This document shows positions 38,916 through 44,566 of a DNA stretch of 64,000 bases, in pieces. Source of the DNA: Ylistrum balloti (lineage: Eukaryota); the NCBI RefSeq assembly GCF_031769215.1, contig NW_026781965.1, positions 1,674,001 to 1,738,000 of the forward strand. Direction: 5' to 3'. The translations under genes and the position numbers were made by a program. Below the pieces are notes generated by a model. It had not been told where the DNA came from, made no database searches, and worked only from the letters and a program-made list of their open reading frames with translations. Each line of letters opens with the position of its first letter. Within the stretch, counting starts at the first letter, position 1.

Positions 38916-41900
38916 ATGGGGCGACGACCAGCTCGTTGGTAAGTTTGTTTTACTGTAAAATGATGTCTTTCAGGAATAGACAAAATGCATTTGACAGTTT
39001 CGGTTGATCATTATTAAGCTAACATTATAATCTCAATTATAAGTTACTATTTTGATCTTTCATCCATTTCATTGTTTCAAAAGTATTGCAATGTTTACAT
39101 TTTGGTTACTGCTTTACAAATTAAAAAAGTTCGATACCAGCAATCTAATTCTTCATCCCATTAATATATACTTATAATTACATATCGATGGTGTACGCAC
39201 GTCACTTTATCGCGTCGCGATATTAATTTTACATATCGACATGTTTTTCCAGTTACAGATATTGTAAAAACAAGCCATACCCCAAGTCAAGGTTTTGTCG
39301 TGGTGTCCCAGGTAAGCAACGTGGATGTACTATATACATTGAAGAATACTGTTTTGGGAGGTTCATATATAGGTAGCTTATGCACAAGCACTTTCATCCA
39401 CTATTTATGTGACTTTCAATAATATATTTCAAACGTTACTGTTTAAGCAATTTCGTTTGTTTACTAACCAATCCACACGCCAACAGGGGAATAATGTAAT
39501 AGACAATCTAGCTGTTTAAATCATGTGAAATGAAAAACTTGCTGTTTGATGTCCTTGAAATGATGTTCAGAGCTCCTCCATAGCAACAAATTTGTGTAAT
39601 TCTCGCTTCTTACTTCAAAGTTAAAATTGTGATTAAAATACTTTACTAAACTATTATGCACCAAAATGAACACTGGTTTCATCTCTCTACAAACCAAAGT
39701 TCCTCAGTATTTGCTAGAATTCTCAACCTGCTGCTCTATTCAGTTTCTTTAAATGCAGAAGTTCCATCATTCATAGAAAATGGATTTTTGAAAGAACTAA
39801 CAGATTGGTTGACCAAAAGTAGGGTGGCCAATGATCAATTTACAATTTATTGTTATGAGTCCCTTTTAACTATAGAGTATTTCCAGAAATTTTATGAGCA
39901 CTATCAAAATTTTACGAGAATGGGACTTGGGATTCGCATGTAGCTTGATCACTGCCTGTGAAGTCTTGTATATAGTTAACAAAGTAGTCAACAGTAGATC
40001 TGAATGACATCTCACAGAGATCAGTTAAAAGCTCAACAACTTTGGCTCTGGCCTTTGACAACATCAAACTTTCATTTTAGTATATATTAAAAAAGGAGCA
40101 TGACATGAACATGTGCCCTTACTCTTTGGAAGAATCCTTTGTCGACCCACGAACCCTGTACATTTATAAGTCTAGTTGAAAGGAATGTCATTAATATTCA
40201 GTCAGACAAAAAAAACTTGCCTCTCTATGGTAATGAACTGTCAAGACTGAAATTATTGCATAATACTATACTCTATAACCACCTTAAATACCCCAATAGG
40301 CACTTGCATCAAACTTTTTACCTGTGTATAACTACATACCACATATCCATCTCCCACATTTACTGTACCAGTGTCTATTTGATCTGGCACCTTGACTTTG
40401 TATGCACACTATATATTGCAGTTTTTTCAGTGTACCACAACTATAATATATTGCAAGATACAAGAGTGACACAGTTAATTTTGTGATTTAGTTCTAGAAT
40501 GTCAACACTTATTCTCCAACATGAGATACATAGGTGATGAACTAGTATTAAAAGATGTTTCTAACCCATTATCTGGATGTGTTGACCTGCAGATCCCAAG
40601 ATCCGTATTTTTGATCTTGGCAAGAAGAAAGCCAGGGTAGACGAGTTCTCACTATGTGTGCATCTGGTATCTGATGAGTATGAACAGTTGTCATCTGAAG
40701 CACTGGAAGCAAGCCGTATCTGTGCCAACAAATACCTTGTGAAGAACTGCGGCAAGGATTCTTTCCATTTAAGAATGCGAGTGCACCCCTTCCACGTTTG
40801 CAGGATCAACAAGATGTTGTCGTGTGCTGGAGCTGATAGGTAAATTTTGTTGCAGCTTTTTTCTCTCATTCAGAAATGAAAAGTGAAATGCATCTGTTAG
40901 TTACTTAAGAAAATTAATCTTGTTAACTTATCTTGATATCATGTGTCCCAAAGTGACATTTTATTTGACAATTAAAGTATATTTATTCTATATAGGATAT
41001 TGACAAATTTATTGAGATCAATAATAAGCTATCTTACATCTCAAAGCATTTGTGAATGCTGATGCTAACAAGTTTAAGAAAGTATTAAACATACTGATAT
41101 TCAACTTATGACAGAAAATTCAAGAGAAAAATCTAAATGCTCTTTGCCTAATACTTAAAATATCAAATGTGCTCTATATTTCTGTTTCATAAAGGTGTTA
41201 GTATAAATGTATCCCTAATCAAACTTATGCTGGTTAAACATGAAATTTCCAGGCTTCAGACAGGGATGCGTGGTGCCTTTGGTAAACCTCAAGGAACAGT
41301 TGCACGTGTGCACATTGGTCAGCCAATTATGTCATGCCGTGCCAGAGAAAGCAACCAGGCTGCTGTCATTGAGGCCCTCAGGAGAGCAAAATTCAAGTTC
41401 CCAGGCAGACAGAAGGTATCAACAATTTTTGGAAACTTAACCAATTTAAGTGTTGTCATTTTGCAGTCAAGCAGTGCCAGCTCCAAATCAACAAATATTG
41501 TTTATTTGGCCGTTCTTCTACTGCAATAGTAACACTTTGGTCGCTATATCAGCTCATTGTATCTCTTGATCTGATACGTTACCTCAGTTACAATTAAATT
41601 ATCAAAGTCGGGCTGAAACAATGATGAAATGGAGTATCCAAATTGTTTAAAAACAATATACACAAAAAATTGGAGTGAGGGGTTACAAATATTTCTATTC
41701 AAGTTGAAAACCTTTTATATTTGACCATTTGGGGGAAATGAGTAATTTAAACCTGGGATAAACTTTCCTTTTATGTAATAAAGTATACAGAAATCAACAC
41801 CTATTTAGCAGTACCAGCTCCAAATAAATCATCTTATTGTTAATTTTATCGTTCTGTTGCTGCAATATAAATAATTTGGTTGCTAAATCAGCCCACTTAT

Positions 41901-44566
41901 ATTTGTGCGCTTGTTAATTTAACTTTGTGACATCTCTATTTTTTCAGTGATATTAATTTTTTTCAAGTGAAAAAATGACACAAAACATCTTCAAGTATAT
42001 AGATATGATGTATAAAATTTTTAATTGCTATACAATACATCCACAGGCACTGGCCTCATCTATCAATATTCTCGTCATATAATCAAGGATATTCAACTTC
42101 CTTGACCAAGTAAAACCACAAAGTTTCAGGAAACGAGTGATTGCCTCTGATCCATTCAAGATTTCTTGATGGGAATGGTCTGAATTTACAGATAATAGAT
42201 TTTATGCCAATTTTTACATATGATTCAGCATATTTTGTGCCATTAAACTGAGATCAGATTTCTGCAAATACTGTTCAATTTCAGTTAAGAAGGCAGTTAT
42301 CTGGCAGGGAATTTGGACACTGACACCCTATAGATTAACTTTAAAAATACCTTCACATGACATGTACTTTATCGAACTTTAATACAGTGTGAAAGTAATC
42401 ATAATCCTTAAGCTTATCCTGTTCAGATTTAATACTTTTGATACACTTTATTATTGAAGCCACCATTTCGGCTTGAGAAACTGGAAATCAACACCAAATT
42501 TTCAAAATGGGGACTATCAACACAATGTTTATGAAAGTGTAAAGGTCATGTCCATTTTCCAAAATTGAAATGTCAGTAACACCAAAACTGTGTAACTGAT
42601 TTACTCAAAAGGTTTAGTTACAATCACATTTCTAGGCCATTGGAGTTCCAAACCTTCATTAATACAGAAGTATATTGGTAGACCAGGCTAGTACCTGTGA
42701 TTCATCAGTCTTTTAAAAATCTTCATCAATTTAAGGGTATGAATATTGCCCAGAGCTATTGAATATCAACACATGAATGGGCAACAGAAAATGTCAGGGA
42801 TATTGATTGAATGTTGTAAAGCAGTACCAGCTCCAAATTGACATGTATTGTTAGTTTGATCGTTCTACTACTGCAATAGTAACACTTTAGTTGCCATATC
42901 AGTCCACTTCTATTGGTGGGTTTGTTAAATGACTTCAGTCACATCTAATTTATTATTGCATTAAATCAGTATGTAATGTCTCTTGATGGAATAGTTTCAG
43001 AACAGGCATGTACATTAATGCAACTGTGATAATGTAGTAATCAGCTCCTTATAACATCTAGTTATCGTTTTGATTGAAATAACCGCCTGTGTAATAAGCA
43101 TTGTTTTCTGTTTATTCTTGTTATTGATTTACAAATGATGTTGCAAATCTAAAGAGGTGATAAGAAGTTATATATTCTTGTATCTCACCCGGACTTCTTG
43201 GCAGTCTTCTTATAAAGCAGTACCAGCTCCAAATTGACAAATATTGTTAGCTTGGCCGTTCTACTACTGCAATAGTAACACTTTAGTCGCTATATCAGCT
43301 CGCTGTACATTCAAGTGATTTGATACGTAACTTCAGTTACAATTAGGATAATGGTTTAATTACAGTCACAATGCTAGGCCATTGAAGTTCCAAACCCTCA
43401 TTAGTATAAAAGCGTAGTGACAAACAAGGCTAGTACCTGTGATTTACCAGTCTTTTATAAATTTAAGGGTATGAATATAGTCCGGAGCTGTTGAATATTA
43501 ACACATGATTAAGCAGTTGATGATTGTAAGGATATGGATTGAAAGTTGTAAAGCAGTACCAGCTCCAAATTGACATGTATTGTTAGTTTGATCGTTCTAC
43601 TACTGCAAGAGTAACACTTTAGTTGCCATATCAGTCCACTTCTATTGGTGGGTTTGTTAAATGACTTCAGTCACATCTAATTTATTATTGCATTAAATCA
43701 GTATGTAATGTCTCTTGATGGTAAAGTTTTTAGCTCCTTATAACACCTAGTTATTGTTTTGATTGATATAACTGCCTGTGTAATAAGCATTGTTTTCTGT
43801 TTATTCTTGTTATTGATTTACAAATGATGTTGCAAATCTAAAGAGATGATCAGAAATTATATATTCTTGTATCTTTATAAAGCAGTACCAGCTCCAAATT
43901 GACAAGTATTGTTAGTTTGATCGTTCTACTACTGCAATAGTAACACTTTGGTCGCTATATCAGCTCATTGTATCTATCCAAGTGATTTGATACGTAACCT
44001 CAGTTACAATTAGGAAAATTTACGAGTATCTGATGTGTAAATAATGCTCTAGATATTAATGAATTTGAAATTGAATTAACCTCTGTTTACATGTATTACC
44101 AAAACAGAAACAGATTAACATTTTAGCCAGATCATATCTTCAATATGGTAATCACACTGTAGCCATTTAGTAACATGATTGTGCAACTGCTTTCCATGAA
44201 CAGAACCCACTCTTTACAAGATTCTAATACTTTCTAGAAATGTATAAAATTGAATTCGTCAGATTTGTTAGACCACCATCATCAAATACTGTGGTCTGTC
44301 TGTCCATTCATCGACGGTCAGATGACTGTTAAGAGCCATTGCCCTGTTGGAATTCTGTGCTAATAGTTTATGGCTAATCCACCTGTTCTCTCTTTTTGCA
44401 GATCTTTGTCTCCAAGAAATGGGGCTTCACAAAGTGGGAGAAAGATGTATATGAGGAGATGAGACAAGATGGACGTCTCATTCCCGACGGTGTCAACTGT
44501 CAGTACAAACCAAACAAGGGTCCCCTGAGTGCATGGAAGTCCCTTACTACTGCTCGGCTGTCGTGA
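38916..44566 (+). CDS. RPL10: 60S ribosomal protein L10 (uL16), 218 aa, 5 coding exons
   Basis: Exons 38916-38938, 39253-39311, 40593-40839, 41253-41415 and 44402-44566 (657 nt) translate to [37 protein letters not shown]...[33 protein letters not shown]...[20 protein letters not shown]. Non-coding exon 1 is at about 38727-38737. Confidence 0.99.
41471..41595 (+). ncRNA. Box H/ACA snoRNA copy 1 (type A)
   Basis: Hairpin GCAGTG..TACTGC with pocket CCAGCT/CGTTC, H box ATAGTA (41526-41531), second hairpin GTCGCTAT-ATCAG..CTGAT-ACGTT, and ACA at 41590-41592 followed by att. Confidence 0.88.
41808..41935 (+). ncRNA. Box H/ACA snoRNA copy 2 (diverged type B)
   Basis: Stem GCAGTA..TGCTGC (G-U compensated), pocket CCAGCT/CGTTC intact, H box ATATAA, terminal ACAtct. 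Confidence 0.75.
42821..42946 (+). ncRNA. Box H/ACA snoRNA copy 3 (type B)
   Basis: GCAGTA-CCAGCTC-CAAATTGACA/TGTTAGTTTG-ATCGTTCTAC-TACTGC, H box ATAGTA, second hairpin TCCAC/GTGGG, ACAtct at 42941. Confidence 0.85.
43217..43344 (+). ncRNA. Box H/ACA snoRNA copy 4 (type A)
   Basis: Same architecture, with upper stem CCAA/TTGG, H box ATAGTA, pocket GTCGCTAT/ACGT, and ACAatt at 43339. Confidence 0.87.
43553..43678 (+). ncRNA. Box H/ACA snoRNA copy 5 (type B)
   Basis: Near-identical to copy 3. The H box is AGAGTA, a substitution at an N position that keeps ANANNA. ACAtct at 43673. Confidence 0.85.
43882..44011 (+). ncRNA. Box H/ACA snoRNA copy 6 (type A)
   Basis: Same architecture, with H box ATAGTA, pocket GGTCGCTAT/ACGT, and ACAatt at 44006. 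Confidence 0.87.

What the first reader, a model, noticed from the sequence alone, without database searches (positions are those of the whole stretch)
41471..44011. Six-copy polycistronic H/ACA snoRNA array inside a single RPL10 intron
Seen: six 125-130-nt copies lie in the 2986-nt last intron (41416-44401). Each has hairpin-H box (ANANNA)-hairpin-ACA+3 nt. Stems show compensatory or wobble changes (TACTGC vs TGCTGC; CAAA/TTTG vs CCAA/TTGG; H box ATAGTA/ATATAA/AGAGTA), while the hairpin-1 guide bases CCAGCT and CGTTC are invariant in all six. That pattern indicates selection on RNA structure. Known: vertebrate intronic snoRNAs are normally one per intron, released by debranching and exonucleolytic trimming, whereas clustered intronic H/ACA isoforms are described in Drosophila and plants. 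Inference: this lineage must cut several snoRNAs from one intron endonucleolytically, or use unannotated non-coding splicing, which ties guide dosage to RPL10 transcription.
Basis: partly seen in the sequence, partly recalled or inferred. Interest (0 to 1): 0.85.

Follow-up and report, generated by a model that had tools for sequence, protein, structure and literature searches.

The report
Six-copy pseudouridine-guide RNA array in RPL10 intron
The last intron of a scallop ribosomal-protein gene (RPL10) carries six conserved copies of a small guide RNA, predicted to direct pseudouridine formation at the catalytic core of the large ribosomal RNA; the layout is unusual for vertebrates but is already known from flies and plants.

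Summary
The window is Ylistrum balloti (scallop). The 2986-nt last intron of RPL10/uL16 (41416-44401) holds six 127-132-nt box H/ACA snoRNA genes on the host strand.

- **Anatomy.** Each copy has hairpin, H box (ANANNA), hairpin, then ACA plus 3 nt.
- **Conservation.** Homologues sit in RPL10 introns of three other scallop genera, an oyster and an ark clam, at 3 to about 12 copies. Between scallop genera only the exons and the snoRNA copies align.
- **Structure.** Stems covary: 23 of 30 pairs carry compensatory changes. Guide bases are invariant.
- **Targets.** The 5' pocket matches 28S GGGAACG-UG-AGCUGGG (yeast Psi2944, human Psi4491). The 3' pocket of subtype A (copies 1, 4, 6) matches helix 89, GCGU-UC-AUAGCGAC (human Psi4390). 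Vertebrate SNORA63 carries this same pair, so subtype A is SNORA63-like, hosted here by RPL10 rather than EIF4A2.
- **Subtype B (copies 2, 3, 5).** It keeps the 5' pocket but has a diverged 3' pocket whose target is uncertain. Copy 2 looks degraded.

Intronic snoRNA clusters are known in rice and Drosophila. Unchecked scan notes report similar clusters on other DNA of this genome. Verdict: a new member of a known kind, of moderate interest.

The parts
38916..44560 (+). Host gene RPL10/uL16 (218 aa). Exons: 38916-38938, 39253-39311, 40593-40839, 41253-41415, and 44402 to about 44560.
   Evidence: Spliced translation gives a 218-aa protein. The exon-4 query (54 aa) is 100% identical to Ylistrum balloti uL16-like XP_060063369.1. 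Locus L121 from that genome matches the window from 38916.
41416..44401 (+). Last intron, 2986 nt, GT..AG, holding all six copies. Spacers between copies are 210, 883, 268, 206 and 201 nt. Copy 1 starts 53 nt after the 5' splice site and copy 6 ends 390 nt before the 3' splice site.
41469..41595 (+). Copy 1, subtype A (SNORA63-like). H box 41526-41531, ACA 41590-41592.
   Evidence: Covariance-model score 138.5 bits. Folding z-score -4.0. Box and guide coordinates.
41806..41935 (+). Copy 2, divergent subtype B. H box AUAUAA 41865-41870, ACA 41930-41932. Possibly decaying.
   Evidence: Lowest model score, 98 bits. Folding z-score -0.5. Its 3'-hairpin guide and stem carry extra changes.
42819..42946 (+). 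Copy 3, subtype B. H box 42876-42881, ACA 42941-42943.
   Evidence: 139.3 bits. Coordinates.
43215..43344 (+). Copy 4, subtype A. H box 43272-43277, ACA 43339-43341.
   Evidence: 133.7 bits. Coordinates.
43551..43678 (+). Copy 5, subtype B. H box AGAGUA 43608-43613, ACA 43673-43675.
   Evidence: 137 bits. Coordinates.
43880..44011 (+). Copy 6, subtype A. H box 43937-43942, ACA 44006-44008.
   Evidence: 140.6 bits. Folding z-score -3.1. Coordinates.
42600..44016 (+). Tandem duplication of a unit of about 700 bp, each unit holding one B copy and one A copy (42600-43349 and 43342-44016).
   Evidence: Repeat families D2-D4. In the unit-to-unit alignment the snoRNA parts are 95-96% identical. Spacers are 87% identical, or 73% counting gaps (Fisher p about 7e-15).

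Best explanation
The intron carries a tandemly amplified cluster of genuine box H/ACA guide snoRNA genes, co-transcribed with RPL10 pre-mRNA.

All six share a 5' pocket predicted to place a pseudouridine at the 28S site GGGAACG-U-G-AGCUGGG near the peptidyl-transferase centre (yeast Psi2944, human Psi4491).

Subtype A (copies 1, 4, 6) has a 3' pocket predicted to place a pseudouridine in helix 89 (GCGU-U-C-AUAGCGAC, human Psi4390; the same U is m3U2843 in yeast). That makes subtype A the bivalve counterpart of vertebrate SNORA63 (E3).

Subtype B (copies 2, 3, 5) is an old paralogue with a changed 3' pocket. The array grows and shrinks by tandem duplication and unequal exchange.

Inferred, not shown: after splicing the copies are separated by endonucleolytic cuts in the unconserved spacers and trimmed by exonucleases up to the bound H/ACA proteins. 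This would tie the dose of this guide to RPL10 transcription.
For: **Architecture.** H box, ACA plus 3 nt and two hairpins are present in all six copies.

**Covariation.** Across 33 copies from 6 species, 93% of cells are paired, 23 of 30 pairs show changes on both sides, and 0 of 500 shuffles reach this. Slid controls give at most 45% paired.

**Guide conservation.** The guide bases C.AGCTCC, CGTT and GC.A and the ACA box never change, and the H box keeps ANANNA, in all 33 copies, while the stems change.

**Selection.**
- Between Ylistrum and Pecten, Argopecten and Mizuhopecten the only alignable blocks of the locus are the exons and the six copies.
- Within the tandem unit the snoRNA parts are 95-96% identical, against 87% (73% with gaps) for spacer.

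**5' pocket target.** Its best rRNA match in three independent eukaryotic rDNA units is the same 28S site, 6+6 bp. The pocket top is 15 nt from the H box. The oyster homologue pairs 7+9 bp with the same site, reached by 0 of 100 shuffled guides.

**Subtype A 3' pocket target.** Its best match in all three is the helix 89 site, 8+4 bp, 14 nt from ACA.

**Site identity.** The three predicted sites are spaced 17 and 101 nt apart. The A-loop UGU lies 23 nt upstream of the 5'-pocket site. Both facts match yeast 2826/2843/2944 and 2921-2923 (table in PMC5699541).

**Known counterpart.** Vertebrate SNORA63 is reported to guide both 28S-4491 and 28S-4390 (PMC6984369). U4390 lies in helix 89 (PMC7072173).
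Against: - No Rfam family, SNORA63 included, matches at gathering score or at E up to 10.
- Complementarity alone is weak statistics for the scallop guides: 15 of 200 and 17 of 200 shuffled guides reach the same best score somewhere in the rRNA.
- The rRNA used comes from metagenomic eukaryotes, not from the scallop.
- The 3'-hairpin matches of the oyster and ark-clam homologues were not significant in my simple scan.
- Copy 2 folds no better than shuffles.
- No expression, RNA-end or pseudouridine data exist here, so the processing route is pure inference.
Confidence: 0.85

Rival explanations
1. At the transcript level the rule of one snoRNA per intron still holds. Unannotated, poorly conserved non-coding exons or alternative or recursive splice sites lie between the copies, so different RPL10 isoforms (probably degraded by nonsense-mediated decay) each release single snoRNAs by ordinary debranching and trimming.
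For: SnoRNA host genes are known to make many splice variants sensitive to nonsense-mediated decay (PMC4233243 abstract). Spacers of 200-880 nt leave room for small exons. Nothing here excludes it.
Against: No spacer block is conserved between four scallop genera, while exons and snoRNAs are. The public gene models returned for four scallop species show only the RPL10 gene across this region, with no separate gene called between the copies. The number and order of copies differ between species, so any such exons would have to be re-invented with each duplication.
Confidence: 0.2
2. The intron is not resolved into six separate snoRNAs. Exonucleases stop at the outermost bound copies, giving long snoRNA-ended RNAs (sno-lncRNAs). 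These would appear alone or alongside mature snoRNAs, and inner copies would be released only partly.
For: In mammals two snoRNAs in one intron give sno-lncRNAs by exactly this route (PMC11028025). No endonuclease signal could be identified here.
Against: Inner copies (3, 4, 5) are as well conserved as the outer ones. This is expected if each one works as a guide. In Drosophila and rice, intronic clusters are described as an expression strategy for individual snoRNAs (PMC2780460 and the title of Huang et al. 2004, as cited in PMC2246290).
Confidence: 0.15
3. Only one or two copies are working genes. The rest are recent dead duplicates carried along by tandem duplication, so the 'array' has no dosage meaning.
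For: Copy 2 scores lowest (98 bits), folds no better than shuffles, and has changes in its 3' guide. Truncated copies exist in Mizuhopecten and oyster. Copy number varies from 3 to about 12 between species.
Against: Five of six copies keep all boxes, stems and guides. SnoRNA parts are held at 95-96% identity against 87% (73% with gaps) for spacer within the duplicated unit. Multi-copy arrays are kept in six species of three bivalve families.
Confidence: 0.15
4. The repeats are a mobile element or satellite with no RNA function.
For: They are repeated and lie in an intron.
Against: There are no other copies in the 64-kb window. In six species they are found within RPL10 introns, always on the host strand. 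Stems covary strongly and guide bases are invariant.
Confidence: 0.02

Closest known systems
Vertebrate SNORA63 (E3) box H/ACA snoRNA
   Same: It has a two-hairpin H/ACA architecture. One pocket is assigned to 28S-Psi4491 and the other to 28S-Psi4390 in helix 89 (PMC6984369, PMC7072173). Subtype A is predicted to guide the equivalent two sites. That its 5'/3' pocket order matches is my reading of the row order in the paper's table.
   Different: There is no detectable sequence or covariance-model similarity through Rfam. The host gene is RPL10, not EIF4A2. There are several tandem copies in one intron rather than a single copy per intron. A paralogue (subtype B) has a different 3' pocket.
Intronic snoRNA gene clusters of Drosophila melanogaster (H/ACA isoform clusters) and rice
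   Same: Several snoRNA genes, often isoforms made by tandem duplication, sit inside a single intron of a host gene on the host strand (PMC2780460; Huang et al. 2004, cited in PMC2246290).
   Different: This case is in a lophotrochozoan (bivalve) lineage, where my literature searches found no snoRNA study. Processing has not been examined. I could not read the primary Drosophila papers, which are not held.
Yeast snR37 (25S Psi2944) and human SNORA10 (28S Psi4491)
   Same: They guide the same conserved U near the peptidyl-transferase centre as the 5' pocket of all six copies (PMC5699541, PMC6984369).
   Different: They are different snoRNAs with different second targets and a different gene organisation. 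snR37 is, from memory, an independently transcribed yeast gene.
Human SNORA70, the H/ACA snoRNA hosted by human RPL10 (host relation from memory, not checked here)
   Same: It is an H/ACA snoRNA in an RPL10 intron.
   Different: The SNORA70 family targets 18S U1692 (PMC7072173, stated there for SNORA70G). The scallop copies have their best matches in 28S, not 18S, and give no Rfam SNORA70 hit.
Mammalian sno-lncRNAs (for example SLERT)
   Same: They have two or more snoRNAs in one intron (PMC11028025).
   Different: There the product is a long RNA capped by snoRNAs at both ends. Whether the scallop intron gives such products is unknown.

Membership tests
Box H/ACA snoRNA | Hairpin-hinge-hairpin-tail fold | tested here: met
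   Single-sequence and alignment folds. Across 33 copies, 30 pairs are 93% paired and 23 carry compensatory changes.
Box H/ACA snoRNA | H box ANANNA in the hinge | tested here: met
   AUAGUA, AUAUAA or AGAGUA in all six copies. The positions are conserved in all 33 copies.
Box H/ACA snoRNA | ACA box 3 nt from the mature 3' end | tested here: inconclusive
   ACA is invariant at the foot of the 3' hairpin in all copies. The mature 3' end is unknown without RNA data.
Box H/ACA snoRNA | Internal-loop pocket with two-part complementarity to rRNA around an unpaired U-N, with the pocket top 14-16 nt from the H or ACA box | tested here: met
   5' pocket: 6+6 bp, 15 nt from the H box. Subtype A 3' pocket: 8+4 bp, 14 nt from ACA. 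Oyster 5' pocket: 7+9 bp, 0 of 100 shuffles. For subtype B the best candidate lies 17 nt from ACA, outside the range.
Box H/ACA snoRNA | Stable RNA bound by dyskerin, NHP2, NOP10 and GAR1 | not testable with these tools
   No expression or binding data are available.
SNORA63 (E3) family | One pocket guides 28S-Psi4491 and the other 28S-Psi4390 | tested here: met
   This is by prediction only. Subtype A pockets give their best matches at sites 101 nt apart, mapping to yeast 2944 and 2843, that is human 4491 and 4390. The SNORA63 assignment comes from PMC6984369.
SNORA63 (E3) family | Match to the curated Rfam model | tested here: not met
   No Rfam family matched the intron at E up to 10 or the window at gathering score.
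SNORA63 (E3) family | Host gene EIF4A2 (vertebrates) | tested here: not met
   The host here is RPL10. Human SNORA63 is paired with EIF4A2 in PMC7072173.
Intronic snoRNA gene cluster (rice and Drosophila type) | Two or more snoRNA genes within one intron, on the host strand | tested here: met
   Six copies lie between exon 4 and exon 5, all on the + strand. The same holds in Pecten, Mizuhopecten and oyster. In the ark clam three copies lie in intron 3.
Intronic snoRNA gene cluster (rice and Drosophila type) | Individual snoRNAs released from the single excised intron | not testable with these tools
   This needs RNA data.
SNORA70 family | Guide for 18S U1692 | tested here: not met
   The best matches of all pockets are in 28S. 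No Rfam SNORA70 hit.

The most novel reading that the evidence does not exclude
Two linked readings remain open. First, subtype B may be a neofunctionalised copy. A few point changes in the 3' pocket (GUCGCUAU to GUUGCCAU or GCUGCUAU, plus a new 3' strand) would have moved its target from the helix 89 U (human 4390) to the U 17 nt upstream (yeast Psi2826, human 4373). The tandem array would then show guide retargeting in progress. Second, bivalves may, like flies and plants, routinely resolve multi-snoRNA introns by an endonucleolytic pathway that vertebrates rarely use.
Probability: 0.3. Interest if true: 0.55.

Novelty: new member of a known kind. Interest (0 to 1): 0.4.

Why it matters
- **Age of the SNORA63 pairing.** The SNORA63-type pairing of two peptidyl-transferase-centre pseudouridine guides in one RNA appears to predate the split of molluscs and vertebrates. 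This independently supports the recent reassignment of Psi4491 to SNORA63.
- **Host gene is not fixed.** The host gene of a conserved guide differs: RPL10 in pteriomorph bivalves, EIF4A2 in vertebrates.
- **Wider spread of intronic clusters.** A third major animal lineage, besides insects and plants, carries intronic snoRNA clusters. Copy number ranges from 3 to about 12 between related genera.
- **A system for an open question.** This gives a tractable case for asking how several snoRNAs are released from one intron, and whether copy number sets guide dose.

None of this overturns current understanding.

Tried and rejected
- **Rfam.** The window at gathering score, and the intron at E up to 10, gave only three chance-level hits (SNORD27, GlsR5, ST7-AS2_2). 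None coincides with a whole snoRNA copy: SNORD27 clips the first 27 nt of copy 3, the other two lie in spacers.
- **SNORA70 orthologue.** I first suspected one because human RPL10 hosts SNORA70 (from memory). Rejected: the pockets match 28S, not 18S.
- **Subtype B target.** Scans with closed or open lower stem gave two competing candidates and no winner. One is the site equivalent to yeast 2826, with the pocket top 17 nt from ACA. The other is GGCCAUUU-UU-GGUA, at 14 nt, which is lost in the Ylistrum B copies.
- **3' pockets of oyster and ark clam.** They gave no significant match in my contiguous-pairing scan.
- **Minus-strand C/D candidate.** A possible box C/D snoRNA in the repeated spacer block 42608-42720 and 43350-43462 was rejected. 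Its C-box-like motif is on the strand antisense to the host and is lost in the second copy.
- **Argopecten last exon.** It was not inside the fetched locus, so the intron bounds there are unknown.
- **Primary Drosophila paper.** PMC1370813 is not held.
- **Shuffle statistics.** Shuffled-guide statistics for the scallop guides alone are unimpressive at 7-9%. The argument rests on conservation, on the oyster guide, and on coincidence with known modified sites.

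
Full report
**What is there.** The window is from the scallop Ylistrum balloti. A 54-aa exon-4 query is 100% identical to its uL16-like protein XP_060063369.1. The public locus L121 matches the window from 38916. RPL10/uL16 lies on the + strand in five exons: 38916-38938, 39253-39311, 40593-40839, 41253-41415, and 44402 to about 44560. 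It encodes 218 aa. The last intron is 41416-44401, 2986 nt with GT..AG ends.

The intron holds six copies of a 127-132-nt unit: 41469-41595, 41806-41935, 42819-42946, 43215-43344, 43551-43678 and 43880-44011. A 19-nt core motif occurs six times against 0.00 expected, and nowhere else in the 64 kb. A covariance model built from scallop copies also finds only these six in the window.

**Anatomy.** Each copy reads: lower stem GCAGUA/UACUGC, an internal loop, an upper stem, the H box, a second hairpin, then ACA plus 3 nt. The H box is AUAGUA in four copies, AUAUAA in copy 2 and AGAGUA in copy 5.

The copies form two subtypes that differ through the whole 3' hairpin:
- Subtype A is copies 1, 4 and 6.
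- Subtype B is copies 2, 3 and 5.

Copy 2 is the most divergent. It scores 98 bits against 134-141 for the others, its fold is no better than shuffles, and it has extra changes in the 3' guide.

Copies 3+4 and 5+6 form a tandem duplication of a unit of about 700 bp. Within that duplication the snoRNA parts are 95-96% identical. The spacers are 87% identical, or 73% counting gaps.

**Comparative evidence.** I fetched the RPL10 loci of other molluscs through their proteins and searched them with the covariance model.

| Species | Full copies | Location |
|---|---|---|
| Pecten maximus | 6 | last intron |
| Argopecten irradians | 3 | after exon 4 (last exon not in the fetched locus) |
| Mizuhopecten yessoensis | 12, plus 2 truncated | last intron; one truncated copy in intron 2 |
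| Magallana gigas (oyster) | 3, plus 1 truncated | last intron |
| Tegillarca granosa (ark clam) | 4 | one in intron 2, three in intron 3 |
| Haliotis, Biomphalaria | none | no hit at E up to 1 |

Between Ylistrum and the three other scallop genera, the only alignable blocks across the whole locus are the exons (with promoter and UTR) and the six snoRNA copies. The spacers do not align at all.

On the 33-copy alignment, 93% of cells are paired and 23 of 30 pairs show changes on both sides. None of 500 shuffles reaches this, and slid controls reach at most 45% paired. The caveat is that the alignment was fitted to the model.

The bases C.AGCTCC, CGTT and GC.A and the ACA box are invariant, and the H box keeps ANANNA, in all 33 copies, while the stems differ completely between families. 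This is the signature of a guide RNA under selection.

**Targets.** I fetched eukaryotic rDNA units from metagenomes with a pattern spanning the suspected sites. Rfam confirmed complete 18S, 5.8S and 28S in them.
- **5' pocket, all copies.** A scan for two-part H/ACA pairing gives the same best hit in all three units: GGGAACG-UG-AGCUGGG of 28S, 6+6 bp. The pocket top is 15 nt from the H box.
- **5' pocket, oyster.** The oyster homologue pairs 7+9 bp with the same site. None of 100 shuffled guides reaches this.
- **3' pocket, subtype A.** The best hit in all three units is GCGU-UC-AUAGCGAC, 8+4 bp, with the pocket top 14 nt from ACA.
- **Statistics.** On their own the scallop scores are reached by 7-9% of shuffled guides. 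Complementarity is therefore supporting evidence, not proof.

**Identity of the sites.** The predicted sites lie 101 nt apart. A third candidate lies 17 nt further upstream. The A-loop UGU lies 23 nt before the 5'-pocket site. This matches yeast 25S positions 2826 (Psi, snR34), 2843 (m3U, Bmt6), 2921-2923 and 2944 (Psi, snR37) in the table of PMC5699541. The human equivalents follow from the same spacing: 4373, 4390 and 4491 in the old numbering. The absolute offset is from my own knowledge.

PMC6984369 reports that vertebrate SNORA63 guides 28S-4390. It also reports that a conserved, formerly orphan pocket of SNORA63 guides 28S-4491. PMC7072173 lists SNORA63 with host EIF4A2 and target U4390 in helix 89.

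Subtype A therefore works like SNORA63. It does not match any Rfam model, and it sits in a different host gene. An earlier scan note (s1-258825) had the same two-target idea but said humans use two different snoRNAs. The Xenopus paper shows that one human snoRNA covers both sites.

**Subtype B.** The 3'-hairpin halves group by subtype across species: 86% identity within a type between species, against 65% between types within a species. The 5' halves show no type signal, and several cross-type pairs are 95-100% identical. The A/B split therefore predates these scallop genera, and the copies exchange their 5' halves.

The subtype B 3' pocket has two candidate targets:
- The first is the U 17 nt upstream of the subtype A site (equivalent to yeast Psi2826). 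Pairing is 8-12 bp plus 4 bp, but the pocket top is 17 nt from ACA.
- The second is GGCCAUUU-UU-GGUA, with the pocket top at 14 nt. This pairing is lost in the Ylistrum B copies.

I leave this target open.

**How it probably works.** Shown by sequence: host-strand genes inside one annotated intron, selected for structure and guide sequence. Inferred: transcription with RPL10, release from the spliced intron, separation by endonucleolytic cuts in the spacers, and exonucleolytic trimming up to the bound proteins. Three rivals remain:
- Hidden non-coding exons. These are not conserved if they exist.
- SnoRNA-ended long RNAs of the kind seen in mammals (PMC11028025).
- Partial decay of the array, with copy 2 and the truncated copies in other species as examples.

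None of these can be settled without RNA data.

[quoted passage not shown] 2004, cited). It is also a category in a 2024 review. My searches found no snoRNA study in molluscs.

Unchecked notes from this scan list similar multi-copy single-intron clusters elsewhere in this genome: in a nucleolin paralogue, KANSL2, CK2alpha, eIF3c and RPL14. If they hold, this is a habit of the genome rather than a peculiarity of RPL10.

I rate it a new member of a known kind, of moderate interest.

Noticed in passing
L126:2619-2748, 5419-5548, 6312-6442, 6950-7079 (Tegillarca granosa RPL10): In the ark clam the homologous snoRNA copies lie in introns 2 and 3 of RPL10, not the last intron. The family has moved between introns of the same host gene.
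   Followed up: partly
L124:2595-2719 and 3704-3853 (Mizuhopecten); L125:2974-3063 (oyster): These are truncated or degenerate copies that have lost the 3' hairpin. In both species one of them lies directly after the 5' splice site of the last intron, the position held by intact copy 1 in Ylistrum.
   Followed up: partly
L122:4717-4850 and 5079-5212 (Pecten); L124:3949-4070, 4431-4554, 6751-6873, 8416-8538 (Mizuhopecten): There are further diverged H/ACA-like units between the A and B copies. In Mizuhopecten they give weak model hits of 27-34 bits. The two Pecten units were found only by the motif search. Their guide regions are altered. They may be a third paralogue type or decaying copies. 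No counterpart was seen in the window.
   Followed up: no
L125:2546-2675 (oyster RPL10 intron 3): This is a weak model hit (19 bits) with H/ACA-like layout but different guide bases. It may be an unrelated snoRNA in another RPL10 intron.
   Followed up: no
L123:2001-4358 (Argopecten irradians): The public 214-aa model XP_069124670.1 reads from exon 4 on into the intron (tail ...GRQKVATSYICPF...) and has an extended N-terminus. The true last exon is not within 2 kb downstream, and two snoRNA copies lie beyond the annotated gene end. This is probably a mis-annotation.
   Followed up: partly
window upstream of 38916, minus strand; L121-L128 position 1 to about 1600: A gene with RUN and PX domains lies head-to-head with RPL10 in all eight mollusc loci fetched, so the synteny is conserved. 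In the ark clam only the RUN domain is listed.
   Followed up: no
window 41416-41468: The 53 nt between the 5' splice site and copy 1 align between scallop genera as one continuous block with exon 4 and copy 1. No other spacer aligns.
   Followed up: no
window 42608-42720 and 43350-43462: This spacer block is repeated within the tandem unit at 82% identity. It has a C-box-like UGAUGA on the minus strand in the first copy only. It is not conserved in other scallops.
   Followed up: partly
L124:5415-9298 (Mizuhopecten): Three units of 1665 bp, each holding A, A and B copies, are repeated almost identically. This is a very recent array expansion.
   Followed up: no
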